A stretch of 64,000 nt of DNA from Macrostomum lignano (lineage: Eukaryota): positions 1 through 64,000 of the forward strand of contig NIVC01001035.1 in assembly GCA_002269645.1 (NCBI GenBank), in the 5' to 3' direction. Made by a program: the position numbers and the translations under genes. Below are positions 3,001 through 37,100 of this stretch, in pieces; the stretch's first letter is position 1, and each line of letters starts with the position of its first letter. Under the pieces are notes generated by a model. That model did no database searches, was not told the origin of the DNA, and saw only the letters and a program-made list of their open reading frames with translations.

Positions 3001-4115
3001 CCGCCCCAATGAAATCCATAATCTGCCCCAATGAAATCCATAATCTGCCCCAATGAAATCCACAATCCGCCCCAATTAAAATCCACAATCCGCCCCAATA
3101 AAATCCATAATCTGCCCCAATGAAATCCATAATCTGCCCCAATGAAATCCACAATCCGCCCCAATAAAATCCATAATCCGCCCCAATGAAATCCACAATC
3201 CGCCCCAATAAAATCCATAATCTGCCCCAATGAAATCCATAATCTGCCCCAATGAAATCCACAATCCGCCCCAATAAAATCCATAATCCGCCCCAATGAA
3301 ATCCACAATCCGCCCCAATAAAATCCATAATCCGCCCCAATGAAATCCACAATCCGCCCCAATAAAATCCATAATCCGCCCCAATGAAATCCACAATCCG
3401 CCCCAAAAAAGTCCATAATCCGCCCCAATTGAAATCCACAATCCGCCCCCAAAAGGGGCACCTACATCGCACTCAAGAATTGCCATCCAGAACCGCCCCT
3501 AACAAAAGCATCTCAACATAAAATTCGCCCCAGACGTACAAGTTCAGCGTTGACCTGGCCACCGGTGGCAAGAACCTGGACTACCTGTCCGGCCTATACG
3601 CCATGGAGTTAATCGTTGGCGATGCTCTGATTGACAAGTCTCTAGTTTGGCACCTGGCCGACGTGAAGCTGGACCTACCAGATGAAGCCAATAAGCCTGG
3701 CGCAGTTGCCACCCCGCAAGAGACCGAGCGAGCCGCTCTGAAGCCTAAGCCGGAGATTAAGCACGTGTTTAGGCAGCCGGACAAAATGGCACCGGCCTCT
3801 ATTGCTATGGGCTTCACCATCCTGTGCCTGGCTCCGCTAGCCATCTTACTAATCCTGTGGGCTTATCTCGGCGCTAATCTATCCGGATTTGTCACCTCAG
3901 TGCCGGCTCTATTGTTCCACATCGGCCTAGCCGGTATATTAATCCTATACTTCTTCTATTGGAGCTGTCTCAATATGTTTGAAACCCTGCGCTATCTGTG
4001 CCTATTGGGCGTGCCAACTTTTATCTGCGGCAATCGCCTGCTGAGATCGCTGGCCTCCGGCGGCTCTGGGGGTGAGAAGAAAATTGCCGAGCGAAAAAAA
4101 TGCTTAATGGATTGA
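1..4115 (+). CDS. RPN2: Ribophorin II (OST subunit 2), 5'-partial; exons <1..443, 1148..1783, 1894..2007, 3534..4115
   Basis: Recognisable RPN2 motifs: QADExDGQYLYYE, TYPAKAKSQLEADSHQ, HQAFIRL..EAIFVAEPD, LIVGDALI..SLVWHLADV, PKPEIKHVFRQPDK, then three hydrophobic C-terminal segments. All introns are phase-0 GT-AG. At least 7 frame changes are needed in the first 1.7 kb; exons 3-4 are clean. Confidence 0.93.
466..985. repeat. 35-bp minisatellite (AGCCCGAAGGGCCTTGTAGGRTGATAGCGGCCCAC), RPN2 intron
   Basis: Tandem copies read directly. Confidence 0.95.
2040..3465. repeat. 22-bp minisatellite (AATCCGCCCCAATAAAATCCAY), RPN2 intron
   Basis: About 60 tandem copies; source of the spurious GADYGFYWGGLW ORFs. 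Confidence 0.95.
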
Positions 4116-7432: not shown

Positions 7433-7617
7433 CTCAACCCCTCCAGCTCCGCATCTACGCCAATGCAGTTGTACAGTGGATTTATAACCTTCACGATGCA
7501 TTAGCCAGAATGAATCATTGTTACATTCTTATGTGCAATTTTATAAATATAACTATAAATATAATTGCTATCCGCTGCTATCGTTCACAGGTGGCGCACC
7601 TGTTGACGTCATCAAGC

Positions 7618-10600
7618 ATGTACAACATGAACAATCCTTATGGCATGCCGCCGCCTCAGCATATGGGCATGCCGCCTCCGCCACCGCCTCATCAAATGCC
7701 GCAAATGCAAATGCCGCCAATGATGATGCAGCATCAGCAACAGCAGCATCAGCAGCAGTACATGCCTCCTATGCCGCCTATGCATATGGCCTATCAGCAG
7801 ATGATGCAACAGCAGCCTCAGCATCACATGATGGCGCCGCCGCCAGTACAGTCTCCGATGTCTATGGCCGGTTTCCCTATGCAAATGCAGCAGCCGCCAA
7901 TGTCAATGCCAATGTCTACTATGCCTACTCAGATGCAGATGCCGCCGCCTGGGCAGATGTCTATGCCAGCAATGCCGATGTCTGTGCCGCCACCCGGTCA
8001 GCCAATCATGCATCAAATGCAGCAGCAGCGACCGATGCCTCCCACTTCTATGCCGCCGCCGCCGATGCAGTTTCCGACTCAGTCTCAGAGCAGTCAGCAG
8101 CAGCAGCAGCAGACGCCCGGATCTCAACAGCAGAATCCATCATATCAGCAGCAGTTGTCTTCAAGCTCAATGCCGTCAACTTTGCAGTCGTCACAACAGG
8201 TATCTATACCGTCAGTTGTTGCTGACTCAGCCGCTGCAGCCACCGTTGCGTCACCGATCGCTGTTGCGATGGAAACGCAGCAACAGCAGCGGCAGAACCA
8301 ACAGATACCGTCGCCTCCTCCATCGCCAACGTCAATCCTAGCAACAGACCACGTGTCGGCCTCGCAGACCACTCAGCAATACATTCAACAGAGTATATTT
8401 AAAAGTTATTCGCCAGATTTTCGAACCGTATTAAAAGAATTACATCCGCCTACGGCTGTTACTCATTGTTTATACTGTCGATTAATGTCGCCCAGAGACC
8501 AGCAGCTGCTAGTATTTAGCGGCCATCTGCTTCGTGTCTATCGCCTTGTAGAGGCCGGTACAGATGAACTTGGCGCCAATGCCGACGCCTCCCATAACAG
8601 CAGCGGCGGAGCAGCTCTTGACTTTGTCTACGGTGTTGAATTCTACTCACCCGTGCTAGATGCACTAGCCTTGCCAGCCACGTGTCTAGATAAACGCGAC
8701 TCGCTACTCTTAGCTTTTGAAGAGGCCAAATTGTCCGTTGTTGAATTCGACGATTCCACTAGAGAATTGCGGGCTACATCTTTGCACACGTACGAAGATG
8801 TCAAGTATAAAGATGCCAGACGCCAGTTCACCAGGCCGCCAATGCTTAGATTAGATCCGCAACGATCTTGCGTTGTTATGCTAGTCTATGACAAGCATCT
8901 GGCTGTGCTGCCGCTGCGCAGACAGCTAGTTGGCGTGCCCGAGCTCGACGCTAAACCAGCCGTTCTGCCGTCCTACGTTCTACCCTTATGGGATCAGGCT
9001 GAAGCTATTGTCAACGTAGCTGATGTACAGTTTCTTAATGGCTACTACGATCCGACTGTGTGCGTGTTGCACGAACCAATTGGCACTTGGAGTGGCCGGG
9101 TAACTGCTAGACACGACACTTACCGGATTACGGCTATGTCGCTAAATCCAAAGGATAGGGTGAGGCGATTGATTTTCTGATATTTTTATGGTACTGACCA
9201 CTTACCAGTAGGAGAAAAATGTATTTCCTAGGGTCTTCAAACTTTTTTACTTCGAGGGCCAGGTAGAGAACCTAGCGCATGACTGCGGGCCAGAGGATGG
9301 GAGAGTAGAAATGAGAGGAAGGGGGAGGGGAGGAGAGGAGAGAGCAGAGCAGAGAAAGAAGAGAAGGGGAGAGGAGGTAAGAGAAAGAGAGGATAAAAAA
9401 AGAGACGAGAAGGAGAAGAGAGAAGAGAGACGAGAAGGTAGAAGAGAAGAGATGAGAAGGTAGGAGAGAGGAGAGAGGAGAATGTAGGAGAGAAGAGAGA
9501 CTAGAAGGTAGAAGAGAAGAGATGAGAAGGTAGGAGAAAAGAGAGAGGAGAAGGTAGGAGAGAAGAGAGACGAGAAGGTAGGAGAGAAGAGATGAGAAGG
9601 TAGAAGAGAAGATATGAGAAGGTAGGAGAGAGGAGAGAGGAGAATGTAGGAGAGAAGAGAGACTAGAAGGTAGAAGAGAAGAGATGAGAAGGTAGGAGAG
9701 AAGAGATGAGAAGGTAGGAGAAAAGAGATGGGAGAAGGTAGGAGAGAAGAGAGACGAGAAGGTAGGAGAGAAGAGAGACGAGAAGGTAGGAGAGAAGAGA
9801 GAGGAGAAGGTAGGAGAGAAGAGAGACGAGAAGGTAGGATAGAAGAGAGAGGAGAAGGTAGGAGAGAAGAGAGAGGAGAAGGTAGGAGAGAAGAGAGACG
9901 AGAAGGTAGGATAGAAGAGAGAGGAGAAGGTAGGAGAGAAGAGAGACGAGAAGAGAGACGAGAAGGTAGGAGAGAAGAGATGAGAAGGTAGGAGAGAAGA
10001 GAGACGAGAAGGTAGGAGAAGAGAGAGAGAAGGTAGGAGAGAAGAGAGCTGAGAAGGCTAAATGTCCTGCAGGCCGAGCAGCTCAGCGATAAACCTGCTT
10101 GACTCTGGAGCCACGATCACAGCTGGTTCGAATCCGTTCGTAGTCACATTTGGTGATATTGTGCACTAGAAATTGGCCGAGACGATTAGAAAGTCAAGGA
10201 GCCGCTGTGCACCCTATGTGAGCGTGACTGTACAGAATTGGCGCTCTTGCATGTGCTCAGGATCCAGTGGAATGGACAGAATTGCCGTCAGCACTGGTTG
10301 CGGTATCAACTCATTCCTTCATTTTTCTCCCCGCAGACAAATCCAATAATCTGGTCTCAAGCCGGCCTACCATTCGATTGCTTCGCTCTGCTTCCAGTGC
10401 CCAAGCCGATTGGCGGCCTAGTTGTATTGGCCCGAAACAGCGTTATCTATCTGAATCAGAGCCAGAGACCCACCGGCTTAGCTTTGAATAGCAACATTAA
10501 TAATAGTACCAGCTTTCCATTGCGCAGAGTCTATCCGCCAACGCCTCGTCTGAGTCTGGACGGCGGCAAAGCAATATTCTTGCCAAACACTGGCGGCCGG

Positions 10601-13600
10601 CAATTCTTAGTTGGCGTACGAGACGGCAGTTTCTACGTGTTCACTCTGTACATCGACTCCGACATGCGCCAGTTGAACGGCTTCCACTGGGAGCCGGTCG
10701 GGAAATCTTCGCCGCTGTCTTGCTTTGCTATGCTAACAGCTATGGAAGCTGAGACTGCCGGCCTCACTATCGGAGCTAATCCGGCCGACGTCACTGATAG
10801 CGGCGGCATGTTGTTTGTTGGTTCGTTTGTGTCGGATTCCGAATTAGTCCGTTTAGTTGGCACCGGACCAATGCCAACGCCTGTGCAGTTTACTAATGGC
10901 GACGCGTCTGCCGCGGCCGCTGCACCGACAGCTCCGGCTACCCCGCCTCCGCCGCCGTCGCCTCCAACCATAGACGATGACGATGACAATGAGAATGTTG
11001 AAGAAGATGACGATATGCGGGATAATAGTAAAGCAACTGAGCACAATGATGAGGATGAAGGCGATGGAGATGCTAATGAAGAGCCTCAGAATCCTCAGAC
11101 CGATGAAGCTGATGTAGAAATCAAACAGGAAGAAGAGGACAATCATTCCGAAGCAACAGTCGCGAAACGGCGTCGTCTTGAATCGTCTTTCTCAAACACG
11201 TCGCTAGTGTCTCCTCCTCCTCATACTAGTGCTGCTCAGGACCAAGATGAGTCAGTGGACAAGCCAACTGTTAATCCGGCGGATTCCTTGAATGAGGACA
11301 GTCAACAGGCGCCGCCTTCGTTGATGTCGCAATCGTCCGTGACACCGTCCGAGCAGCAGCAGCAGCAGGAGGAGCCGCCTCAGCAGCCGCTTGGCGTGCC
11401 GCAGGTGTCCGATCCAGAGCTTGACGAAATCTACGAAACAGAAGAGGCGGCCAGCCAATCAGATCCGACTAAACGATTCCAATTAGATCGATGCGATTAT
11501 TTGCCAAATGTTGGGCCAATTGGCGAGCTCACGGCCGCTTATATACAGGGCATGTTCGATAATTTCCTAGTGAAAGAGTCGGCAAATCTTGAATTGTTAA
11601 CCTCCTATGGACACGCTGAGCACGGCGGTATTAACTTGTTGCAGCGCAGTGTTCGGCCTCTAATTCATTCTAGCTTTGAGATTCCCGACTGCTCAAGCCT
11701 GTGGTCACTCTACGGCGACAGGCGGCGGCCTTGGCAGTTCGAGAGCAACGCCGAAGAAGATGAGGAATGCGAAGGTCACGGCTATTTAGTGCTCAGTAGA
11801 GAGGAGACTAGTCTGGTGTTTCAGGTCACGGACGAAATTGCCGAGCTGGAGGATTCAGGATTTTCTACTAGCGAGCCTACTCTGTGGGCTGCGGATGTTG
11901 GCGACGATCTGAGCTTGCAGGTGAGCAGCATCACCTCCACCCTCCCAGATCCTCAGTTGCTGGGCCAGCCTCCCAGATCCTCAGTTGCTGGGCCAGCCTC
12001 TCAGACCTCAGTTGCTGGGCCAGCCTCCCAGATCCTCAGTTGCTGGGCCAGCCTCCCAGATCCTCAGTTGCTGGGCCAGCCTCCCAGATCCTCAGTTGCT
12101 GGGCCAGTCTCTCAGATCCACTGTTGCTGGGCCAGCCTCCCAGATCCTCAGTTGCTGGGCCAGCCTCCCAGTTCCTCAGTTGCTGGGCCAGCCTCCCAGA
12201 TCCTCAGTTGCTGGGCCAGCCTCCCAGATCCTCAGTTGCTGGGCCAGTCTCTCAGATCCACTGTTGCTGGGCCAGCCTCCCAGATCCTCAGTTGCTGGGC
12301 CAGCCTCCCAGATCCTCAGTTGCTGGGCCAGCCTCCCAGATCCTCAGTTGCTGGGTCACCAGCCTCCCAGATCCTCAGTTGCTGGGTCACCAGCCTCCCA
12401 GATCCTCAGTTGCTGGGTCACCAGCCTCCCAGATCCTCAGTTGCTGGGTCACCAGCCTCCCAGATCCTCAGTTGCTGGGTCACCAGCCTCCCAGATCCTC
12501 AGTTGCTGGGTCACCAGCCTCCCAGATCCTCAGTTGCTAGGCTAGCCTCCCAGATTCTCAGACAGTGCTTAAACTTACATGTACCTTTATACTGTCTTAA
12601 TCAGCTATCTCACTAACCCCCTCCAACTCCTCAGGTGTGCCCGTCCTCAGTCCGTCTCCTTCGCGGCAGCCAGCAGGTGCTGGTGCAGCCGTTAGAAGAG
12701 CGAGCCCGCCTAGTCACTGTCTGCGATCCGTTCGTCCTCATAGTAGACGAAACTGACGGCTTCCTACTGCTGGAGGTGATCGGCGAGACCCTCAGAACGG
12801 AGAGGCCAACAGTGCAGCAGTACAGCTTTGCCACCGCCATCGCCATCACGGATCATCCGTTCCTGCGCTTGCATAGGAAACCTACCGCTGCTGATGATGG
12901 CGCTGCCGATTTTGCCGACTCTGCTGCCACGGCCGCCGCTGCAACCTTCGATCCTCTAGAAGAAGAAGACGTCCTGCTGTATGGCGACGCTCTAAGCGAA
13001 CGCGCCCGCCGGCCAGCCGCTCCGCCGCCGCCGCCAACTTACGATTCAGATTGTCAAACAACTCACTGGGCAATTGTGTGCTACGAGAGCGGCGCGTTAG
13101 AGATTTATCAATTGCCTGATTTTGTTTGCTGCTTCGCTGCTAAAGCCTTCTCCGATGGGCCAAGGCTGGTCACGGATGCTAGTCTGTTCGCCGCTACACA
13201 GGTCGGCGCTGGCGGCATTGACACCGCGACTGGTGCCTCGCTTCCGACAGCTGCCGCCGCCGATGACGATGTGCCGCCAGAGGTCAGTTGTTAACAAAGT
13301 ACATTGCGGATTTTTTGACATTGTTGTAGGCAGGGGGGTTGTGTGCACTTTGGCGCACTTTAAGCGACATAGGCACACAACCGGCGAGAGGCATTGCTGC
13401 CCATTCCGCCGACTCCCCTGAGCAGGCATACAAGCGCGCGGATACGTACGCAGGCACACACTCACACAGGAGTGTACAGCGGCCCTAACTATATTATCGT
13501 TAGGCATGTACACTTCACTGCGCCTTGGGGGGTTGGCTCTCAAGGCCGTTAATTGCACGAGCAGAGCCAAGCCGAGATTCCAATTCAGCCCCAAATTAAT

Positions 13601-16600
13601 GTGACTGCACTTGGAATCGAGCCTGGGTCGCTGGCACACCAGAGCAGCTTCTTCTTCTTCTTCTTCGGGTCGCGGTCATTCTGGCTAGCCAATAGGACCG
13701 GGTGTCTAGCACCATGCAGCCAGGGCGCTGACTCCGTGCGGGCGGACAGTAGACGGCGGAGTCCAATTTGCGGCCTGCAGAGAGTGGCCACTAAGCGAGG
13801 GGACCCAGGTCCCGGTGTGCAGGGCTCCACTGCAGGGCGGCTTACGCTGTAAAAACCGCCGTCCACCGCCAACCCAGCGGAAGGGGACAGCTCCCCCAGG
13901 CTGCATACCCGGATGTGAGACCAATTCGTCACCCCGTCGATGGTAGGATCGCACGAAGCTCCTGCCACATTGGCGGGGTGTCCAGGGGCGCGACGTGGAC
14001 GCTGGTCTCGTGCCCCCTCGCGCACCAGAGCAGCTGCGCTACCGCTGGGCTACGCCCCCCCCCCTGGCATCCGTGATTCAGGCACTCTTCTCTCAGCATC
14101 CGTGATTCAGCACCCTTGCCTCAGCACCCCTGATTCAGTACTCTTGCCTCAGCATCCCTGATTCAGCACTCTTGCCTCAGCATCCGTGATTCAGCACTCT
14201 TGCCTCAGCACCCCTGATTCAGCACTCTTGCCTCAGCATCCGTGATTCAGCACCCTTGCCTCAGCATCCGTGATTCAGCACTCTTGCCTCAGCACCCCTG
14301 ATTCAGCACTCTTGCCTCAGCATCCGTGATTCAGCACTCTTGCCTCAGCATCCGTGATTCAGCACTCTTGCCTCAGCATCCCTGATTCAGCACTCTTGCC
14401 TCAGCATCCCTGATTCAGCACTCTTGCCTCAGCATCCCTGATTCAGCACTCTTGCCTCAGCACCCCTGATTCAGCACTCTTGCCTCAGCATCCGTGATTC
14501 AGCACTCTTGCCTCAGCACCCCTGATTCAGGCACTCTTCTCTCAGCATCCGTGATTCAGCACCCTTGCCTCAGCATCCGTGATTCAGCACTCTTGCCTCA
14601 GCATCCCTGATTCAGCACTCTTGCCTCAGCATCCCTGATTCAGCACTCTTGCCTCAGCACCCCTGATTCAGGCACTCTTGCCTCAGCATCCCTGATTCAG
14701 CACTCTTGCCTCAGCATCCCTGATTCAGCACTCTTGCCTCAGCATCCGTGATTCAGCACTCTTGCCTCAGCATCCCTGATTCAGCACTCTTGCCTCAGCA
14801 TCCGTGATTCAGCACTCTTGCCTCAGCATCCCTGATTCAGCACTCTTCCCTCAGCACCCCTGATTCAGGCACTCTTGCCTCAGCACCCCTGATTCAGCAC
14901 TCTTGCCTCAGCATCCGTGATTCAGCACTCTTGCCTCAGCATCCCTGATTCAGCACTCTTGCCTCAGCATCCGTGATTCAGCACTCTTGCCTCAGCATCC
15001 CTGATTCAGCACTCTTGCCTCAGCATCCGTGATTCAGCACTCTTGCCTCAGCATCCCTGATTCAGCACTCTTCCCTCAGCACCCCTGATTCAGGCACTCT
15101 TGCCTCAGCACCCCTGATTCAGCACTCTTGCCTCAGCATCCGTGATTCAGCACCCTTGCCTCAGCATCCGTGATTCAGCACTCTTGCCTCAGCATCCCTG
15201 ATTCAGCACTCTTGCCTCAGCATCCGTGATTCAGCACTCTTGCCTCAGCATCCCTGATTCAGCACTCTTGCCTCAGCATCCGTGATTCAGCACTCTTGCC
15301 TCAGCACCCCTGATTCAGGCACTCTTGCCTCAGCATCCCTGATTCAGCACTCTTGCCTCAGCATCCGTGATTCAGCACTCTTGCCTCAGCATCCCTGATT
15401 CAGCACTCTTGCCTCAGCACCCCTGATTCAGACACTCTTGTCTCAGCATCCCTGATTCAGCACTCTTGCCTCAGCAGCCCTGATTCAGCACTCTTGCCTC
15501 AGCATCCCTGATTCAGCACTCTTGCCTCAGCATCCCTGATTCAGACACTCTTGTCTCAGCATCCGTGATTCAGTATTGTTGGTATTCCCAGTAAAGCATC
15601 GCTCGGTGTGAGTAATTTTCAAGAAATCACCTCTAATAAGAGTTACATTATAGGCACAAATTCACTACAAAATAACAGCGGGCCGCTAAATCCTTGTCAG
15701 GTGGAAGAGCTCAGCTTAATGCCAATCGGGCGTCACCTTGACCGCCTGCTGCTGCTCTGTCGCAGTCGTGACGAAGTGTCGGCCTACGAGGCGTACCCGG
15801 CCCCGGCCTCCGATGTGGCCGCTCTGCCACCGGGCCGACTGGCAGTTCGTCTGCGCCGATTAGACGATCTGGGCGTGCTGCTGCGGACCGGCAAGAAGCC
15901 AAGCAAGCAGCGCCGAACTGGCAAGCAACAGCAGCAGCAACAATTGCTGCTTCAACAGCAATCTGAATTGCAACAGCAGCTGCATGGCAAGCACGCTAGG
16001 CTATTAGTGCCATTCGAAGACATTGGCGGCTATCGCGGCCTGTTTGTCGGCGGCGTTCGGCCGCATTTTCTAGTCGTGTCCCCGTCTGGTCAGGCCTACT
16101 CTCATCCTATGTTCGTCGACGGCTCAGTGTGCGCCTTCTCTCCATTTGACCGGCACTTCTGCCGGCACGGATTTCTCTATCTGACTCCCGAACGCGATTT
16201 GAGAGTAGCCAGCCTGCCAGATGACTATGATTATGCTTCGCCTTGGCCTAGGAAACGGGTGCCATTGGGCCGCACAGTGCACTGCGTACAGTTCCATCGG
16301 GCTACTAGCACTTATCTGGTGGCTAGCAGTGCGCCCGAACTTAGCAATGCCATCTGCCGGCTGTCGTCTGATGGCGATAAGGTACGGTTTATTACTGCTG
16401 CTGTCTTTTTACTTGTGATGTATTGCACCTCTTTTAGAGTCTCGGCATCTCTTATTAGTATTTAGTATTTGTTTCCGTTGTCTACCTCCCTTCTCTTCCC
16501 TCTCTTCGCCACCCCTCTCTCCTCTACCCCTCTTTTCTCTACCTCTCTCTCTTCTCTACCCTCCCTTTTCTACCCCTCTTTTCTCTACCCTCTCTCTCTT

Positions 16601-19600
16601 CTCTACCCTCCCTTTTCTACCCCTCTTTTCTCTACCCTCTCTCTCTTCTCTACCCTCCCTTTTCTACCCCTCTTTTCTCTACCCTCTCTCTCTTCTCTAC
16701 CCTCCCTTTTCTACCCCCTCTTTTCTCTACCCTCTCTCTCTTCTCTACCCTCCCTTTTCTACCCCTCTTTTCTCTACCCTCTCTCTTCTCTACCCTCCCT
16801 TTTCTACCCCTCTTTTCTCTACCCCTCTTTTCTCTACCTCTCTCTCTTCTCTACCCTCCCTTTTCTACCCCTCTTTTCTCTACCCTCTCTCTCTTCTCTA
16901 GCCTCACTTTTCTACCCCTCTTTTCTCTACCCTCTCTCTCTTCTCTATCCTCACTTTTCTACCCCTCTTTTCTCTACCCTCTCTCTCTTCTCTACCCTCC
17001 CTTTTCTACCCCTCTTTTCTCTACCCTCTCTCTTCTCTATCCTCCCTTTTCTACCCCTCTTTTCTCTACCCCTCTTTTCTCTACCTCTCTCTCTTCTCTA
17101 CCCTCCCTTTTCTACCCCCTTTTCTCTACCTCTCTCTCTTCTCCATCCTCTCTTTTCTACCCCTCTTTTCTCTACCCTCTCTCTTCTCTACCCCTCTTTT
17201 CTCTACCCCTCTTTTCTCTACCCTCTCCTCTCTACCCCTCTTTTCTCTACCCCCTCTCTTCTTTACCCTCTCTCTTCTCTACCCCTCTCTTCTCTACCCC
17301 TCTCTTCTCTACCCCTCTCTTCTCTACCCCTCTTTTCTCCACCCTCTCTCTCTTCTCTACCATCCCTTTTCTACCCTCTCTCTTCTCTACCCCTCTTTTT
17401 CTCTACCCCTCTCCTCTACCCCTCACCCTTCTCAACCCCTTTTTCTTCTTTACCCCTCTCTCTTCTCTGCGTCCTCTTCTTTACCTTCTCTCCTCTACCC
17501 CTCCCTTCTCTACCCCCTCTCCTTTACCCCTATCTTCTCTACCTCCCCGTGTCTACCTCCCCGTCTCTACCCCCTTATCTGCCTCCTCTTCTCTATCTAC
17601 CTCTCTGTCTAAGTCAGTTTGGATTTTTAGCAAAGCTTAACGCTATTCTATTGTACTTCAATTGTACTATTAATACTACTAACCTGAATGCAAGTCAGTA
17701 GTTGAACACGCGTATTTCAATTCCCTCTCGCCGCAGGAAATCGACACCCGCGAAGTGCCGCCAACCCATTGTCTGCCATTCCGCGATCGCTACTATTTCG
17801 AAGCGTACACGCCCGACTGGCAGGCGATACCCGCTGTGAGGCTGGATATGCAGGTCTGGGAACGGGTGGCCTGCTGCAGAATTGTCCGACTGCAATCGGA
17901 GGAGACTGCCGAAGGATTCAAAGAGTTAGTTGCTGTGGCTACTAATTTAAGCTACAATGAGGAGATCACCTGCAAGGTGAGAGAGCGAATTACCGAGAGT
18001 GTACATGACTGACGATAAGATAGCCAGTAACAATAACGCGATGGTAACGGAACAGTTGTAGTAAACTCGCTTCACCGGTCGCAAAACCCTTCCAGGGCAC
18101 TATCACTCTACTGGACGTGATCAACGTTGTGCCGGAGCCAGGCCAGCCTCTCACAGCCTACAAGATGAAGCTGGCATTTCGGGAAGAACAGAAAGGCCCA
18201 GTGACTGCTCTGGCATCCTGTCACGGCCTGCTAGTCTCAGCCATTGGTCAGAAAGTCTACCTGTGGCAGCTTAAAGACGATAGATTAGTTGGCATAGCAT
18301 TCGTTGACTCGGAGATATTGATTCACTCTATTAATTGCGTTAAAAATCTCATTGTGACCTCGGATTTGGCCAAGTCTGTGCAGCTGCTGCGCTACCAGCC
18401 CAGTGTTCGAGTGCTGTCCATTGTTGCTAGGGACTCGGCTAGGTAAGAATTGCCTTTTTTCCCGAGAGGGGACACTGCGCAGTTATGAGTCAGTCTTATT
18501 GGGAATATTTCTAGTCTTGACTATTTATGGGAATTTATATAGGGCACGGGTCGGCAAACTCCTGTCCGAAAAGCCTCTCTATCCGGCCCTCGGGTCCTTT
18601 CAAAACTTCACAATGGCAATCTGGCCATCTCAGGGTTTGTGTCTCTTCTCAGCTTTCTTTACTCCTCTATCTATCTCCTATCCCCCTCTTCTCTCTCCTG
18701 TCTCCCCTCCTCTCTACTCTCCCCCCTCCTCTCTACTCTCTCCTCTCCTCTCTACTCTCTCCCCTCCTCTCTACTCTCCCTCCTCTCCTCTCTCCCCTCT
18801 TCTCTCTCCTCTCTCCCCTCCTCTCTACTCTCTCCCCTCCTCTCTACTCTCTCCCCTCCTCTCTACTCTCTCCTCTCCTCTCTCCCCTCTTCTCTCTCCT
18901 CTCTCCCCTCCTCTCTACTCTCTCCCCTCCTCTCTACTCTCTCCCCTCCTCTCTACTCTCCCTCCTCTCCTCTCTACTCTCTTCTCTCTCGTCTCTCCCT
19001 CCTCTCTACTCTCTCCCCTCCTCTCTACTCTCCCCCCTCCTCTCTACTCTCTCCTCTCCTCTCTACTCTCTCCCTTCCTCTCTACTCTCCCTCCTCTCCT
19101 CTCTACTCTCTTCTCTCTCGTCTCTCCCTCCTCTCTACTCTCTCCCCTCCTCTCTACTCTCCCCCCTCCTCTCTCCTCTCTACTCTCCCTCCTCTCCTCT
19201 CTACTCTCTTCTCTCTCGTCTCTCCCTCCTCTCTACTCTCTTCTCTCTCGTCTCTCCCTCCTCTCTACTCTCTCCCCTCCTCTCTACTCTCCCCTCTCTA
19301 CTCTCTCCTCTCCTCTCTACTCTCCCCTCCTCTCTCCCCTCCTCTCTACTCTCTCCCCTCCTCTCTACTCTCCCTCCTCTCCTCTCTCCCCTCCTCTCTA
19401 CTCTCTCCCCTCCTCTCTACTCTCTCCCCTCCTCTCTACTCTCCCTCCTCTCCTCTCTCCCCTCCTCTCTACTCTCCCCTCCTCTCCTCTCTCTCCTCCT
19501 CTCTACTCTCCCCTCCTCTCCTCTCTCCCCTTTTCTATCTACTCTCTCCCCTCTTCTCTCTCCTCTCTCCCCTCTCCCCTCTTGTCTCTCCCCTCTTCTG

Positions 19601-20898
19601 CAACCATTAGCTAGATTCTTTATCTGGCCCTTGAAGTAAGAAAGTGAGCCGACTCCTGTTATGGATCCAGGTAGTAAAATTTGCTTCAGCTCGATTTGAG
19701 CGGCAATCTAGTTAAAACCCATTTATAAATACTCTCAGGCGCCAAGTGTTCACTAGCAACTTCCTCGTAGACGGGCAAAATCTCGGCTTCCTGCTGTGCG
19801 ACTCTCGCCGCAATCTGCTCGCCTTCGCCTACGATCCCAGCGAGAAGCTCAGCAGGGGTGGCCGCAATCTGGTGCGCAAACGGGAGGCCCGACTGCCGTC
19901 TAGCGTGCACTGCTCACTGCGGGTGCACAACTGCCTGCGCGGGGGCGCCGGACTGGCTAAGACTAGGGATATTCAACAGGTGAGAGAGGGGTGTGTTCGA
20001 GACTTGTTGCTATGGTAACTTGTGTCTATACGTGTTTTAGTGTATTGACTTTTGTGCGTTGCTACGAAGTCAAATCCAGTGTGTTTCCATGACAACCAGT
20101 CCCGTGTGTTCCCATGACAACCAGTCCCGTGTGTCTCCATGTCAACCAATCCCGTGTGTTTTCGTGACAATCAGTCTCGTGTGGTGCCATGACAACCAAT
20201 CCCGTGTGTCTCCATGACAACCAGTCCCCGTGTGCTCCCATGACGATTCCCATTTATTTCCATGGGTTTCCATGACAACCAGTCTCGTGTAACCATGACA
20301 GCCGTCTCATCTGATTTTTTAATAACTAATGCCCCTTTTTCTGATAAAATTGAAGTCCCGTGTGCTTCAATGTCAACCAGCCCCGTCTGTTGCCATGACA
20401 ACTAATCAAGTGGTTTTCCAATAACAATATTTATGTTAATAGACGTTGATGTTCTTTGCGATGTTTTTGCTGTTGCTGCCATGCCAACTAAGCTAAAACA
20501 TGATCTTACTAACGCTATATTGAATTAGATGCTAATCCATACGCATGTCCGCACGCTCTCAGGGCCACTCGGTTGTCATGGGAACCGCCGAGGGCGGCCT
20601 GTACTTGTTAACCCCGGTTCGCCGACCAGTCTACACCCGGCTAATCATGCTGGAGAAGCACCTGAGCCACGCCGTGCTGCACCCAGCCGGCTTGCACCCC
20701 AGAGCTTCGAGAATCTATTCGCCAGCCAATCACGACTTGGAGCCGGCCAAATCCGGCATTATCGACGGCCACTTGATGTACCGCTACGTGTCGCTTGGCC
20801 ATTCCGAACGCGTTGAAGTGGCCAAGAAAGCCGGCTTGAGTGCCGACGCTATCCTGGATGATCTGGCCGAGATTCAAGTGTCCACTTTGCATTTCTGA
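7618..20898 (+). CDS. CPSF1: Cleavage and polyadenylation specificity factor subunit 1 (CPSF160); join(7618..9159,10337..11920,12635..13282,15701..16381,17737..17976,18096..18442,19739..19979,20563..20898), 1872 aa
   Basis: Motifs ELHPPT, LSVVEFD..T..L.ATSLH.YE, P.LRLDPQ.SC, LPFDC..L.VPKPIGG, VINVVPEPGQPLT..K, EQKGPVTAL, AGLHPRASR and C-terminal ILDDL...STLHF. All 7 introns are GT-AG with matching phase; total 5619 nt. A strong acceptor at 7590 lies just upstream of ATG 7618. Confidence 0.96.
9228..9297 (+). mobile_element. hAT-like MITE terminal fragment in CPSF1 intron 1
   Basis: Resembles the CAGGGGTC..CAAACTTTTT..GAGGGCC termini of hAT non-autonomous elements; 37/46 ungapped identity to the reverse complement of the terminus ending at 19658. 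Confidence 0.55.
9300..10052. repeat. Polypurine array, ~24-bp unit AGAAGGTAGGAGAGAAGAGAGACG
   Basis: Read directly. Confidence 0.9.
10070..10265 (+). mobile_element. tRNA-derived SINE (partial), CPSF1 intron 1
   Basis: A-box-like GCAGCTCAGCGATA and B box GGTTCGAATCC at 10125-10135; body motifs (GTAGTCACATT, GCCGCTGTGCAC..TGTGAG, TGCTCAGG) shared with the 13.3-14.06 kb copy. Confidence 0.65.
11942..12555. repeat. 28-bp minisatellite switching to a 31-bp variant (CCCAGATCCTCAGTTGCTGGGCCAGCCT), CPSF1 intron 2
   Basis: Read directly; it artificially extends ORF 10238..12616. Confidence 0.95.
13650..14022 (-). mobile_element. Non-autonomous ribozyme-headed retroelement (~370 bp) with (AAG)n tail and 13-bp TSD
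   Basis: TSD CACCAGAGCAGCT at 13637-13649 and 14023-14035; (CTT)6 on + at the left end; HDV-like ribozyme at the right (5') end; no credible coding region. Confidence 0.85.
13917..14017 (-). ncRNA. HDV/CPEB3-like self-cleaving ribozyme
   Basis: Minus strand: P1 GGGGGC/GCCCCU (G1.U), P2 GAGACCA/UGGUCUC, P3 GCG/CGC, L3 UCCACGU, P1.1 CC/GG, P4 CACCCCG/CGGGGUG, J4/2 ACGAAU with the catalytic C at + position 13928. Activity not tested. Confidence 0.85.
14066..15575. repeat. 28-bp minisatellite (TGATTCAGCACTCTTGCCTCAGCATCCC), CPSF1 intron 3
   Basis: About 53 tandem copies. Confidence 0.95.
16480..17605. repeat. Polypyrimidine (CT-rich) array, CPSF1 intron 4
   Basis: Read directly. Confidence 0.9.
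18545..19658. mobile_element. Degenerate hAT-like MITE enclosing a CT-rich array, CPSF1 intron 6
   Basis: Left CACGGGTCGGCAAACT versus right AGTGAGCCGACTCCTG (imperfect inverted termini) with a GGCCCTTGAAGTAAGAAAGT subterminal motif; no clear 8-bp TSD. Confidence 0.5.
18660..19600. repeat. Polypyrimidine array (CTCTCTACTCTCTCCCCTC-like)
   Basis: Read directly. Confidence 0.9.
20075..20405. repeat. Degenerate ~24-bp repeat (CCATGACAACCAGTCCCGTGTG), CPSF1 intron 7
   Basis: Several diverged copies. Confidence 0.75.
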
Positions 20899-34100: not shown

Positions 34101-37100
34101 GGTTATTCGCTTTATCATGAGGCCATTGATCTCTCACTGTCACACAGCCACTCTCACTGTCACACAGTCACTCTCACTGTCACACAGCCACTCTCACTGT
34201 CACACAGCCACTCTCACTGTCACACATCCATTCTCACTGTCACACAGCCACTCTCACTGTCACACAGCCATTCTCACTGTCACACAGCCACTCTCACTGT
34301 CACACAGCCACTCTCACTATCACACAGCCACTCTCACTGTCACACAGCCACTCTCACTATCACACAGCCACTCTCACTGTCACACAGCCATTCTCACTGT
34401 CACACAGCCACTCTCACTGTCACACAGCCACTCTAAATATCACACAGTCACTCTCACTATCACGCAGCCACTCTAACTATCACACTGCCACTCTCACTGT
34501 CACACAGCCACTCTCACTATCACACAGCCATTCTCACTGTCACACAGCCACTCTCACTATCACACAGTCACTCTCACTGTCACACAGCCACTCTCACTAT
34601 CACACAGCCACTCTCACTATCACACAGCCACTCTCACTATCACACAGCCACTCTCACTATCACACAGCCACTCTCACTATCACACAGCCACTCTCACTAT
34701 CACGCAGCCACTCTCACTATCACACAGCCACTCTCACTATCACACAGCCACTTTCACTATCACACAGCCACTCTTACTGTCACAGCCACTCTCACTATCA
34801 CACAGCCACTCTCACTATCACACAGCCACTCTCACTATCACGCAGCCACTCTCACTATCACACAGCCACTTTCACTATCACACAGTCACTCTCACTGTCA
34901 CACAGCCACTCTCACTATCACACAGCCACTCTCACTATCACACAGCCACTCTCACTATCACACAGCCACTCTCACTATCACACAGCCACTTTCACTATCA
35001 CACAGTCACTCTCACTGTCACACAGCCACTCTCACTATCACACAGCCACTCTCACTATCACACAGCCACTCTCACTATCACACAGCCACTCTCACTATCA
35101 CACAGCCACTCTCACTGTCACAGGGCCTCTCTCACTATCACCCAGCCACTCACGTGTCCCAGTGTGAGCAGCAGGTTTCCCGCCTGGCGGAGCCGCAGCA
35201 CTCAGTCTCGTCGATGCTGCTGCCGGGTTCCGGGCAGGTGAACCTCCCGTCCGCAGGCGGTACGGCCGACAGATTTACCCGGTCCTCGTGGAAGCAGGTG
35301 TCTGTGCGGGACAGGTTGGTTAGGCAATAGGTAGAAGTAGAGTAGACAATGGGTAGAAGTAGAGTAGACAATTGGGTAGAAGTAGAGTAGACAATTGGGT
35401 AGAAGTAGAGTAGACAATTGGGTAGAAGTAGAGTAGACAATTGGGTAGAAGTAGAGTAGACACTTGGGTAGAAGTAGAGTAGACAATGGGTAGAAGTAGA
35501 GTAGTCAATTGGGTAGAAGTAGAATAGACAATGGGTAGAAGTAGAGTAGACAATTGGGTAGAAGTAGAGTAGACAATTGGGTAGAAGTAGAGTAGACAAT
35601 GGGTAGAAGTAGAGTAGTCAATTGGGTAGAAGTAGAATAGATAATGGGTAGAAGTAGAGTAGACAATTGGGTAGAAGTAGAGTAGACAATGGGTAGAAGT
35701 AGAGTAGACAATTGGGTAGAAGTAGAGTAGACAAAGAGGTAAAAGTAGAGTAGACAATTGGGTAGAAGTAGAGTAGACAATTGGGTAGAAGTAGAGTAGG
35801 CAATGGGTAGAAGTAGAGTAGACAATGGGTAGAAGTAGAGTAGACAATGGGTAGAAGTAGAGTAGACAATGGGTAGAAGTAGAGTAGAAGTAGAAGTAGA
35901 GTAGAGGAGGACTTCCTGGAGAGACAGGACATGGTGTCGGCCAACACCAGATTCCGCAAGTCACCGGGCAGGCTCGCGACCTTCGTGGGCTGCAAGCGGA
36001 GGCGGCGGAACGCGCGCGGCCGGAACGCTACGCGGAGGCTGGCACAGCTCGACCACGTGCTTGTGCGCTTTCGTGAGCGCCGCCGCGTCACCAACTGCCA
36101 CACCATTACGCCGCTGGCTCTGCGGTCCGACCATCGGCTGCTCATCTGCGACCTTCGGCTTCGGGACCCGCTCTACCGTCCGCCAAAGCGGCCACCGCGG
36201 CGCTACTACCGCGCGCTCAGGGACGCCGAGACGCGACGTCGCTTTGCCGGTGCCTTTGTCACTGCGCTGGGCGACAAGCGTGGAGGAGCCGAGTACGCGG
36301 AGGTGAGCGCTGCAGTTCGAGCCGCTGCGGAGCAAGCAGTCCCGCTGATGCGACCGGCCCAGCGCGGGCAGCCGGTCTGGCAGGACGACCCCGCGATCGA
36401 CGAAGCGACGGAAGATCTGGAGAGGCTCCGACTGAGTGGGCGGCCAACTCGCGAGGCGGAGGAGGCTCTGGCGGCTGTCTACCTGCAGCGGCAGCAGTCC
36501 GCTGTCGATGACGCCATCCAAGCCGTCTCTGCCGCAGGGCCCGATGCCAGAGGGCGCGTGGCCTGGTCCGCCATCAACACTCTGACGGGGCGAAAGCGGC
36601 GCATCGCGCTCAACCTGGCAGGCGACACTCCGGATGAGCGCAGGAACGAGCTGCGCGAGTTCTTCGCCGCCATTGTCAACGCGCCGCCCCCTCCGCTTCC
36701 AGAAAATCTGAGGCTGCCGCCGGAGACGCCGTTGCCGGCGGAGGAGAGCTTCAATGTTGCCCCAGTCAGCACAGCCGACGTTGTGAAGTTCGCTCGGCAG
36801 TCGCCGGGCGGCAAAGCGCTTGGTCCGGACGAGGTGCCCACCGAGGCGCTGCGGATCCACTGCGTGGCCACTGAGGTCGCCAGAGTGATGAACCGCGTGC
36901 TTTTCGGTGAGGTGGCGCCAAATGAATGGACCACGGCGCACATCGTCGCCATTCCAAAGAAGCCGGGCACCACCAAGCTCGAGGAGCATCGAGGCATCTG
37001 CCTACAGTCCTGCGCCGCGAAGCTGTTCAACCGCATGCTGCTATCGCGGTTACAGCCTGTGCTGGACCCGTACCTGCGACCTGAGCAGAACGGATTCCGG

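What the first reader, a model, noticed from the sequence alone, without database searches (positions are those of the whole stretch)
13917..14017. Complete HDV/CPEB3-type self-cleaving ribozyme hidden antisense in CPSF1 intron 3
Seen: the minus strand reads A^GGGGGC AC GAGACCA GCG UCCACGU CGC GCCCCU GG A CACCCCG [37 nt] CGGGGUG A CGAAU UGGUCUC. Every element of the nested double pseudoknot pairs: P1 6 bp with a G1.U wobble, P2 7 bp, P3 3 bp, a CC/GG P1.1, P4 7 bp, and J4/2 CGAA carrying the catalytic C. Established: this is the HDV-like ribozyme topology, and the P3/L3/P1 core is nearly identical to mammalian CPEB3 (GCGUUCACGUCGCAGCCCCU). Inference: it cleaves 5' of G at 14017. Unusual points are the 6-bp rather than 7-bp P1, a very short J1/2, and a P4 that expands into a branched insert (CCA/UGG and AGGA/UCCU hairpins). 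Being antisense, it should not cut CPSF1 pre-mRNA.
Basis: partly seen in the sequence, partly recalled or inferred. Interest (0 to 1): 0.9.

Follow-up and report, generated by a model that had tools for sequence, protein, structure and literature searches.

The report
HDV-like ribozyme heading a flatworm retroelement
The minus strand at 14017-13917 really does encode a complete HDV/CPEB3-type self-cleaving ribozyme fold. It is the first 101 bases of a roughly 370-base retrotransposed element sitting in a CPSF1 intron of a Macrostomum-like flatworm, so it is a new example of a known arrangement and not a host-gene ribozyme.

Summary
P1 (6 bp, G1·U), P2 (7 bp), P3 (3 bp), P4 (7 bp), a possible 2-bp P1.1 and J4/2 CGAA all check out.

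- A generic HDV-like descriptor finds only this site in both strands of the window. No chance hit in 365 shuffles reaches its 23 bp.
- Rfam's CPEB3 ribozyme model is the best hit in the window, but it is below threshold: 23.1 bits against 35, E = 0.11.

The ribozyme is the 5' end of a short insert:
- It ends in (GAA)6.
- It is flanked by a duplication: 12 nt perfect, or 17 of 19 nt reaching exactly G14017.
- The sequence it split carries A-box and B-box-like motifs.
- It lies antisense in the CPSF1 intron between the exons matching human residues 622-838 and 846-1051.

The genome is probably Macrostomum lignano or a close relative.

Best reading: the ribozyme trims the 5' end of a non-autonomous non-LTR retroelement, as in R2, L1Tc/NARTc and Baggins. 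Catalysis was not tested, and no intact second copy was found. New member of a known kind; moderate interest.

The parts
14023..14034 (-). 5' copy of the target-site duplication GCTGCTCTGGTG. The imperfect 19-nt version spans 14017-14035.
   Evidence: Exact 12-nt repeat located by script. The repeat finder extends it to 19 nt at 89% identity, 14017-14035 against 13631-13649.
14018..14022 (-). CGCGA lying between the perfect 12-nt repeat and G1. It is either a diverged part of the duplication (the 3' copy reads TGCCA) or non-templated junction nucleotides. A14018 is the -1 nucleotide.
   Evidence: Sequence read. PMC3774820 reports that 5' junctions of ribozyme-processed R2 copies often carry non-templated nucleotides or target deletions.
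13917..14017 (-). HDV-like self-cleaving ribozyme, 101 nt. Predicted scissile bond lies between A14018 and G14017.
   Evidence: All helices verified. Only descriptor hit in the window. Exceeds all chance hits in shuffles. Sub-threshold CPEB3_ribozyme match.
14012..14017 (-). P1 5' strand GGGGGC. G1 forms the G·U wobble with U13984.
   Evidence: the minimum-free-energy fold also forms this helix.
14003..14009 (-). P2 5' strand GAGACCA. J1/2 (AC) is 14011-14010.
   Evidence: 7 Watson-Crick pairs with 13917-13923.
13990..14002 (-). P3 (GCG/CGC) with L3 UCCACGU (13999-13993). Together with the flanking A14003 and G13989 it forms a 15-nt core that matches the CPEB3 consensus at 14 of 15 positions.
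   Evidence: cmscan alignment; consensus-core search with 1 mismatch and no match in any of 100 shuffles.
13982..13989 (-). P1 3' strand GCCCCU (13989-13984), then GG (13983-13982), which can form a 2-bp P1.1 with C13998 and C13997 of L3.
   Evidence: P1. P1.1 is inferred from complementarity and from the HDV ribozyme architecture; it was not tested.
13930..13980 (-). P4 domain: a 7-bp closing helix CACCCCG/CGGGGUG around a 37-nt insert that folds as one extended imperfect hairpin.
13924..13929 (-). J4/2 ACGAAU. C13928 is the candidate general-acid cytosine.
   Evidence: CGAAU is identical to the CPEB3 consensus CGAAU printed.
13917..13923 (-). P2 3' strand UGGUCUC.
13667..13916 (-). Non-coding body of the element. 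It forms one long imperfect hairpin plus a small stem-loop just before the tail. A T5 run lies at 13855-13851.
   Evidence: Fold z = -2.2. Nested inverted repeats. The ORF spanning it has no homologues and no Pfam hit.
13649..13666 (-). (GAA)6 3' tail of the element.
   Evidence: Sequence read.
13637..13648 (-). 3' copy of the target-site duplication GCTGCTCTGGTG. The 19-nt version spans 13631-13649.
14042..14052 (-). A-box-like motif TAGCCCAGCGG in the interrupted sequence, read by eye as a possible tRNA-derived SINE head.
   Evidence: Read by eye. ARAGORN does not call a tRNA in the reconstructed empty site, so the tRNA-like nature is only a resemblance.
13613..13623 (-). B-box-like motif GGCTCGATTCC of the same interrupted sequence, now about 420 nt from its A box because of the insert.
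   Evidence: Read by eye; reconstruction.

Best explanation
The 101 nt on the minus strand (14017->13917) are a genuine HDV-like self-cleaving ribozyme. It forms the 5' end of a short (about 370 nt), non-coding, non-autonomous non-LTR retroelement.

Proposed mechanism:
1. A source copy is transcribed as part of a longer read-through RNA.
2. The ribozyme folds co-transcriptionally into the P1-P2-P3-P1.1-P4 double pseudoknot.
3. It cleaves 5' of G1, with C13928 in J4/2 as the catalytic cytosine. This removes all upstream sequence and defines the element's 5' end, leaving a 5'-OH.
4. A LINE reverse transcriptase recognises the 3' stem-loop and (GAA)n end and copies the RNA into a new site by target-primed reverse transcription, creating the flanking duplication.

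This copy landed in a sequence carrying A-box and B-box-like motifs (possibly a tRNA-derived SINE), antisense inside a CPSF1 intron of a Macrostomum lignano-like flatworm. There it is a passenger with no role in CPSF1 expression.

Shown: the fold, the insert boundaries, the tail, the duplication, the strand and the host gene.
Inferred: catalysis, the processing role, and the identity of the mobilising LINE.
For: Fold:
- Every helix pairs as proposed.
- It is the only hit of a generic HDV-like descriptor in the window.
- Its 23 bp exceed all 9 chance loci found in 365 shuffles.

Core sequence:
- CPEB3_ribozyme is the lowest-E-value Rfam match in the whole window.
- The 15-nt CPEB3 consensus core matches with 1 mismatch; none of 100 shuffles contained a match.
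- J4/2 CGAAU is identical to the consensus.
- Relative to that consensus, P2 differs in sequence on both strands yet stays fully paired. P1 is shorter by one base on each strand.

Retroelement context:
- A (GAA)6 tail is followed immediately by a repeat of the 12 nt that precede the insert.
- The tool-extended repeat (17 of 19 nt) ends exactly at G14017, the predicted cleavage nucleotide.
- The insert separates an A-box-like motif from a B-box-like motif of one interrupted sequence.
- The ORF spanning the insert has no homologues and no Pfam hit.
- The same window holds an RTE-clade LINE that also ends in a trinucleotide repeat, (GTT)6.

Precedent:
- HDV-like ribozymes release the 5' ends of R2, R4, Dong, Baggins and L1Tc (PMC3774820; PMC4035085).
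- They also do so for the non-autonomous NARTc and R2 internally deleted elements (PMC3383444 and PMC3414825).

A metagenome contig (L007) carries a 27-of-28-nt match to the core, so the core sequence also occurs in another genome.
Against: - Cleavage was not tested and cannot be tested here.
- The Rfam hit is below the gathering score, and its E-value is only 0.11 at window scale.
- The loose descriptor has a false-positive rate of about 7% per window. The margin over the best chance hit is a single base pair, 23 against 22.
- The nested fold energy is unremarkable.
- There is only one copy in the window.
- No intact second copy was found in viral, metagenome or prokaryotic collections. There is therefore no within-family covariation and no census of 5' ends.
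- L007 lacks a P1 5' strand and a canonical J4/2, and it fails the descriptor.
- Beyond the first 12 nt the duplication is imperfect (4 of the next 6 nt match, p about 0.04 by my binomial estimate), so whether the insert starts at G1 or 5 nt upstream is unresolved.
- No autonomous partner with the same 5' or 3' end was found. The RTE in the window has a different 3' end and tail, and its full-length relatives L001 and L002 have no ribozyme.
- ARAGORN does not recognise the interrupted sequence as tRNA-like.
Confidence: 0.7

Rival explanations
1. Ribozyme-derived but dead. The sequence descends from an HDV-like retroelement ribozyme, but this copy or its whole lineage no longer cleaves, for example because of the 6-bp P1, the 2-nt J1/2 or misfolding with the large P4 insert or the flanks.
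For: If the two mismatches in the 19-nt duplication arose after insertion, the insert has some age. The only relative found (L007) is clearly degenerate. In the longer context the minimum-free-energy fold sequesters part of P1 in alternative pairings.
Against: All 23 helix pairs and the conserved L3 and J4/2 nucleotides are intact. A 6-bp P1 is normal for retrotransposon HDV-like ribozymes (PMC3774820).
Confidence: 0.15
2. Chance look-alike. A G+C-rich stretch happens to satisfy the HDV-like pairing scheme and to resemble CPEB3, with no ribozyme ancestry.
For: The loose descriptor hits about 0.07 times per shuffled window, and chance hits reach 22 bp. The Rfam score is below threshold. The first stage presumably scanned many windows.
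Against: Three largely independent signals coincide at one site. First, 23 bp of correctly nested and pseudoknotted helices. Second, a 14-of-15 match to the CPEB3 core plus an identical CGAAU, with no match to the core in 100 shuffles. Third, a position at the exact 5' end of an insert that has a duplication and a repeat tail, which is where such ribozymes are known to sit.
Confidence: 0.06
3. Domesticated host ribozyme. Like mammalian CPEB3, the ribozyme has a host function at this locus, for example cutting an antisense transcript that regulates CPSF1.
For: It is intronic, as CPEB3 is, and its core is CPEB3-like.
Against: It lies on the strand opposite to the host gene. It has all the marks of a transposon insertion and sits among satellites. 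No orthologous locus could be retrieved to test conservation.
Confidence: 0.04
4. Retrocopy of a small rod-shaped ribozyme RNA. On this reading the insert is a retrozyme-like or deltavirus-like satellite RNA that uses an HDV-type ribozyme, not a SINE-like derivative of a LINE.
For: The 250-nt body folds into one long imperfect hairpin more stable than 195 of 200 shuffles, z = -2.2. It has no coding capacity.
Against: There is a single ribozyme in one polarity and no tandem copy, so unit-length excision and circularisation are not possible from this locus. The (GAA)6 tail and the duplication are typical of LINE-dependent elements. The z-score is modest.
Confidence: 0.05

Closest known systems
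HDV-like ribozymes at the 5' ends of non-LTR retrotransposons (R2, R4, Dong, Baggins, L1Tc) and of their non-autonomous derivatives (NARTc, R2 internally deleted elements)
   Same: The double-pseudoknot ribozyme occupies the first 100 nt or so of the element. The predicted cleavage site coincides with the element's 5' boundary. There is an insertion duplication and a 3' repeat tail. P1 is 6-7 bp and P4 is variable (PMC3774820; PMC3383444, PMC3414825 and PMC4035085).
   Different: The element here is a 370-nt non-coding unit with a (GAA)n tail and no identified autonomous partner. It is not rDNA-specific. Its ribozyme core sequence matches the mammalian CPEB3 model; no other Rfam family matched the 551-nt region at E up to 10. 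No paper in the held library describes a ribozyme in Macrostomum.
Mammalian CPEB3 ribozyme (Rfam RF00622)
   Same: Same fold. Identical or near-identical segments are GGGGGC...AC, AGCGU(U/C)CACGUCGCG, CCCCUG and CGAAU. It is the best Rfam match in the window. Both are intronic.
   Different: The score is 23.1 bits, below the gathering score of 35. P1 is 6 bp, not 7. The P2 sequence is entirely different, with compensating changes. The P4 domain is 51 nt, against about 20. L3 is UCC, allowing a 2-bp P1.1. It lies antisense to its host gene, in a flatworm, inside a transposon insertion, and is not a conserved single-copy orthologous element.
Hepatitis delta virus genomic and antigenomic ribozymes
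   Same: Nested double pseudoknot, G1·U wobble at the cleavage site, a UCC start to L3 giving a 2-bp G-C P1.1, and a catalytic C in a C-G/U-A-A J4/2. This comparison rests on established knowledge of the HDV ribozyme structure and was not tested here.
   Different: No Rfam HDV_ribozyme match at E up to 10. P1 is shorter. The context is genomic DNA, not a circular RNA replicon.

Membership tests
HDV-like self-cleaving ribozymes (structural class) | Nested double pseudoknot: P1 and P2 interleaved, P3 hairpin nested between the P1 strands, P4 between the P1 3' and P2 3' strands | tested here: met
   All helices verified. Only descriptor hit in the window. Total bp exceeds all chance hits in 365 shuffles.
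HDV-like self-cleaving ribozymes (structural class) | Cytosine in J4/2 positioned as the catalytic residue; G·U wobble closing P1 at the cleavage site; C in L3 and G in J1/4 able to form P1.1 | tested here: met
   C13928 within CGAA, G14017·U13984, and CC of L3 opposite GG 13983-13982. This shows presence in the sequence only.
HDV-like self-cleaving ribozymes (structural class) | Site-specific self-cleavage giving 5'-OH and 2',3'-cyclic phosphate, abolished by mutating the catalytic C | not testable with these tools
   Needs in vitro transcription and a cleavage assay.
HDV-like self-cleaving ribozymes (structural class) | Helices supported by compensatory changes among homologues | tested here: inconclusive
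   No intact homologue was retrieved. Against the CPEB3 consensus, P2 is changed on both strands and stays paired, and P1 loses one base from each strand, but homology with CPEB3 is itself unproven. L007 is degenerate.
Rfam RF00622 CPEB3_ribozyme | Score at or above the curated gathering threshold (35 bits) | tested here: not met
   23.1 bits. The model does not encode P2, and it mis-aligns the 3' end because of the long P4 insert.
Rfam RF00622 CPEB3_ribozyme | Orthologous position in an intron of the mammalian CPEB3 gene, on the sense strand | tested here: not met
   The host gene is CPSF1. The ribozyme is on the antisense strand. The genome is flatworm-like.
Non-LTR retroelements with a 5' HDV-like ribozyme | Insert bounded by a target-site duplication and ending in a 3' simple-repeat or A-rich tail | tested here: met
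   A 12-nt perfect repeat (19 nt at 89%) flanks the insert, with (GAA)6 immediately before the 3' copy.
Non-LTR retroelements with a 5' HDV-like ribozyme | Ribozyme cleavage site coincides with the element's 5' end | tested here: inconclusive
   The extended repeat ends exactly at G14017. The perfect repeat ends 5 nt upstream. One copy cannot decide between the two.
Non-LTR retroelements with a 5' HDV-like ribozyme | Repeated in the genome; an autonomous LINE shares the ribozyme and/or the 3' end | not testable with these tools
   There is one copy in the window. The source genome is not searchable by DNA here. The RTE in the window has a different 3' end, and its full-length relatives lack a ribozyme.

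The most novel reading that the evidence does not exclude
The flatworm retroelement ribozyme and the mammalian CPEB3 ribozyme share ancestry and did not merely converge. By my manual alignment of the sequences printed, about 35 of about 39 core positions outside P2 and P4 are identical, although the fold is said to have few invariant positions (PMC3774820). That would make this lineage the first non-mammalian relative of CPEB3 and would point to a retrotransposon origin for it.
Probability: 0.1. Interest if true: 0.7.

Novelty: new member of a known kind. Interest (0 to 1): 0.4.

Why it matters
HDV-like ribozymes that cut retrotransposon RNA out of read-through transcripts are well established. 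One more example in a new phylum-level lineage mainly adds to the catalogue, and it gives Macrostomum lignano genome annotators a defined ribozyme-headed short retroelement.

Two points give it some extra value:
- The catalytic core is unusually close to the mammalian CPEB3 ribozyme, whose evolutionary origin is unknown. A census of this family could test whether CPEB3-type cores circulate in retrotransposons.
- The flanking duplication appears to end exactly at the predicted scissile bond. That would be in-genome evidence that the retrotransposed RNA had been self-cleaved.

M. lignano is a transgenic model organism, so activity in vivo is testable.

Tried and rejected
- **Rfam at gathering thresholds:** no hit in the window. 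Only permissive mode shows CPEB3.
- **tRNA search:** ARAGORN finds nothing around the site or in the reconstructed empty site. The tRNA-like reading of the interrupted sequence rests only on A-box and B-box-like motifs seen by eye.
- **Second copy in the window:** none found by pattern search or blastn.
- **Copies found as spurious proteins:** the 146-aa ORF spanning the insert has no homologues and is not on record.
- **RTE in the window as partner:** it is 5' truncated and has a different 3' end and a (GTT)6 tail. Two full-length relatives from marine metagenomes (L001, L002) have no ribozyme by Rfam or by the descriptor.
- **Collection scans for the core:**
  - Viral contigs gave 0 and then 3 hits; none of the 3 passed the descriptor.
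  - Prokaryotic genomes gave 0.
  - Metagenomes gave 26 hits. I read 25 of them as chance matches in G+C-rich, bacterial-looking sequence; the other is L007.
- **L007:** it has a 27-of-28 core match and a second degenerate fragment. It has no P1 5' strand and fails the descriptor. A relaxed P2+P4 test did not discriminate, because 4 of the 25 other hits also passed it. L007 is therefore not used as covariation evidence.
- **Orthologous or homeologous CPSF1 intron (empty-site test):** exact look-up and a homology search with the adjacent exon both returned nothing.
- **Nested minimum-free-energy z-scores:** uninformative for the ribozyme (-1.1) and for the whole insert (-0.28).
- **Bacterial-type promoter and terminator scan:** nothing found, and not relevant to a eukaryote.
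- **Literature:** no paper on ribozymes in Macrostomum, and no relevant paper containing the core sequence.
Full report
**1. Observation.**
A script asserted each segment and checked every proposed pair:
- P1: G14017-C14012 with G13989-U13984, five G-C pairs plus the G1·U wobble.
- J1/2: AC.
- P2: 14009-14003 with 13923-13917, seven Watson-Crick pairs.
- P3: GCG/CGC around L3 UCCACGU.
- J1/4: GG 13983-13982, opposite the CC of L3, a possible 2-bp P1.1.
- P4: 13980-13974 with 13936-13930, seven pairs around a 37-nt insert.
- J4/2: ACGAAU, with the cytosine at 13928.

**2. Is it more than chance?**
- I wrote a deliberately loose HDV-like descriptor that was not tuned to this instance. It requires P1 of 6-7 bp, P2 of at least 5 bp, P3 of 3 bp, L3 of 7-8 nt with a C, a G after P1, P4 of at least 4 bp, and J4/2 containing C-N-A-A.
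- It finds this site and no other on either strand of the window.
- On dinucleotide-preserving shuffles it fires about 0.07 times per window, 15 loci in 224 shuffles.
- In a second run of 365 shuffles, the nine chance loci had 18-22 total base pairs. The real site has 23.
- The helices alone are therefore significant at roughly the 1-in-several-hundred level per window, which is not overwhelming.
- Rfam at curated thresholds reports nothing in the window.
- In permissive mode the mammalian CPEB3 ribozyme model matches at 23.1 bits against a gathering score of 35. E is 9.5e-4 on 551 nt and 0.11 on the whole window, where it is the lowest-E-value hit of all 4227 families.
- That model does not encode the P2 pseudoknot. 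It mis-places the 3' end because of the long P4 insert, so P2 and the true CGAAU are independent extra evidence.
- The 15-nt consensus core printed by cmscan (AGCGUUCACGUCGCG) occurs here with one mismatch. None of 100 shuffles contained a match.
- Nested minimum-free-energy statistics are uninformative, z = -1.1.

**3.
Reading the minus strand outward gives this order:
- A 28-bp satellite, 14067-15573.
- A G-run and GGGGCGTAGCCCAGCGGTAGCGCA (A-box-like motif).
- GCTGCTCTGGTG, then CGCGA.
- The ribozyme, then 250 nt of non-coding body.
- (GAA)6 at 13666-13649.
- GCTGCTCTGGTG again, followed by TGCCAGCGACCCAGGCTCGATTCC (B-box-like motif).

The 12-nt repeat is exact. The repeat finder extends it to 19 nt at 89% identity, 14017-14035 against 13631-13649. 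It therefore runs up to and including the predicted cleavage nucleotide G14017.

This is the signature of a target-primed reverse-transcription insertion. A roughly 370-nt RNA that began at or within 5 nt of G1 and ended in (GAA)n was copied into a sequence carrying A-box and B-box-like motifs, duplicating the target.

ARAGORN does not call the reconstructed empty site a tRNA. The possible tRNA-derived SINE origin of the interrupted sequence is only a resemblance, and the argument does not depend on it.

The five bases CGCGA between the perfect repeat and G1 have two possible explanations:
- They are a diverged part of the duplication. Four of the next six bases match, p about 0.04 by my binomial estimate.
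- They are junction nucleotides. Eickbush and colleagues report that 5' junctions of ribozyme-processed R2 copies often carry non-templated nucleotides or target deletions (PMC3774820).

**4. The insert itself.**
- The ORF that happens to span it has no homologues, no Pfam hit and is not on record.
- The body folds into one long imperfect hairpin built from nested inverted repeats. Its energy is -117 kcal/mol against -105.4 ± 5.3 for shuffles, z = -2.2.
- A small stem-loop lies directly before the tail.
- A T5 run at 13855-13851 would terminate RNA polymerase III. That argues, by inference, for polymerase II read-through transcription followed by ribozyme processing.
- P4 is not branched in the minimum-free-energy fold. 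It is one extended irregular hairpin.

**5. Host gene and organism.**
- The plus strand encodes CPSF1. Pfam RSE1/DDB1/CPSF1 propeller and CPSF_A domains hit 7510-9180, 10238-12616 and 20545-20898.
- The ORF 12635-13294 aligns to human CPSF1 residues 622-838.
- The ORF 15608-16465 aligns to residues 846-1051.
- The insert therefore lies in the intron between these two exons, antisense. 'Intron 3' fits the order of coding blocks but was not verified.
- A 5'-truncated RTE-clade LINE elsewhere in the window is 391/404 aa identical to a Macrostomum lignano UniRef protein (taxonomy).
- The window is therefore most probably from M. lignano or a very close relative. This inference rests on a transposon, not on a host gene, because the CPSF1 exon search returned nothing.

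**6. Search for relatives.**
- There is no second copy in the window.
- Exact and degenerate core patterns found nothing convincing in viral contigs or prokaryotic genomes.
- The metagenome scan gave 26 loci. I read 25 of them as chance matches in G+C-rich, bacterial-looking sequence. None of the loci fetched up to that point (L001-L031) passes the descriptor.
- One contig, L007 (Ga0209149_1089167), looks eukaryotic. It shares 27 of 28 nt with the core (CAGCGTCCACGTCGCGCCCCTGGA[C/A]ACC), has a second degenerate fragment, and has a (GAAA)n tail downstream.
- L007 has no P1 5' strand and no canonical J4/2, so it is at best a decayed relative.
- Within-family covariation therefore could not be assessed. 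The only comparative signal is against the CPEB3 consensus: P2 differs on both strands yet stays fully paired, and P1 is one base shorter on each strand.

**7. Mechanism.**
- HDV-like ribozymes at the 5' ends of R2, R4, Dong, Baggins and L1Tc cleave the element RNA out of co-transcripts and so define its 5' end (PMC3774820; PMC4035085).
- Non-autonomous derivatives keep the ribozyme: NARTc (PMC3383444) and R2 internally deleted elements (PMC3414825).
- P1 in these ribozymes is 'typically 6 or 7 bp' and P4 is highly variable.
- I conclude, at 0.7 confidence, that this is such a ribozyme heading a short non-autonomous retroelement.
- The element was probably mobilised by a LINE that uses trinucleotide-repeat tails. 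The RTE in the window ends in (GTT)6, but its 3' end differs, so it is not the demonstrated partner.
- At this locus the ribozyme is a passenger. It cannot cut CPSF1 pre-mRNA because it is on the other strand.

**8. Rivals.**
- An intact-looking but inactive relic: 0.15.
- A chance look-alike: 0.06.
- A domesticated antisense regulator: 0.04.
- A retrocopy of a small rod-like ribozyme RNA: 0.05.

**9. Novelty.**
- No paper in the held library describes a ribozyme in Macrostomum or prints this core sequence in a relevant context.
- A Schmidtea mediterranea (planarian) R2 sequence is among the element sequences used in PMC3774820.
- This is a new member of a known kind.
- The one notable feature is how close the core is to mammalian CPEB3. 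By my manual alignment of the sequences printed, about 35 of about 39 positions outside P2 and P4 are identical, in a fold said to have few invariant positions.
- Shared ancestry is not excluded, but I rate it at about 0.1.

Noticed in passing
window 13631-13649 and 14017-14035: The direct repeat flanking the insert extends, with two mismatches, to 19 nt and stops exactly at the predicted ribozyme cleavage nucleotide G14017. This is possible in-genome evidence that the retrotransposed RNA had been self-cleaved.
   Followed up: partly
window 13667-13916 (minus strand): The element body folds into one long imperfect hairpin (nested inverted repeats; z = -2.2 against shuffles). It has a small stem-loop just before the (GAA)6 tail and a T5 run at 13851-13855.
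   Followed up: partly
L007 (metagenome contig Ga0209149_1089167), minus strand, locus coordinates about 1278-1305 and about 1743-1765: A eukaryote-like contig carries a 27-of-28-nt match to the ribozyme core, a second degenerate fragment of the same region, and a (GAAA)n tail about 850 nt downstream. It has no complete HDV fold. It is probably a decayed relative in another organism.
   Followed up: partly
window about 35900-38320 (+): A 5'-truncated RTE-clade LINE (RVT_1 domain) with a (GTT)6 tail, inserted into a 22-bp satellite with a short duplication. It is 97% identical over 404 aa to a Macrostomum lignano protein model. This is the basis for the organism assignment.
   Followed up: partly
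window 12002-12561, 14067-15573, 16500-17521: Large tandem arrays (28-bp, 28-bp and 47-bp units) fill the CPSF1 introns. The first one creates a spurious extension of the long ORF 10238-12616.
   Followed up: no
window 44463-46376 (+): A 637-aa ORF with a P-element transposase-like HTH domain (THAP9-like DNA transposase).
   Followed up: no
window 3603-4115 (+) and 55299-55907 (-): Neighbouring host-gene exons: the ribophorin II C-terminal domain upstream of CPSF1, and a DHHC palmitoyltransferase exon on the minus strand.
   Followed up: no
window 7510-8400 (+): The first CPSF1 coding block is preceded in frame by a long Q/P/M-rich low-complexity stretch before the first beta-propeller. It is unclear whether this is coding sequence or an ORF artefact.
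   Followed up: no
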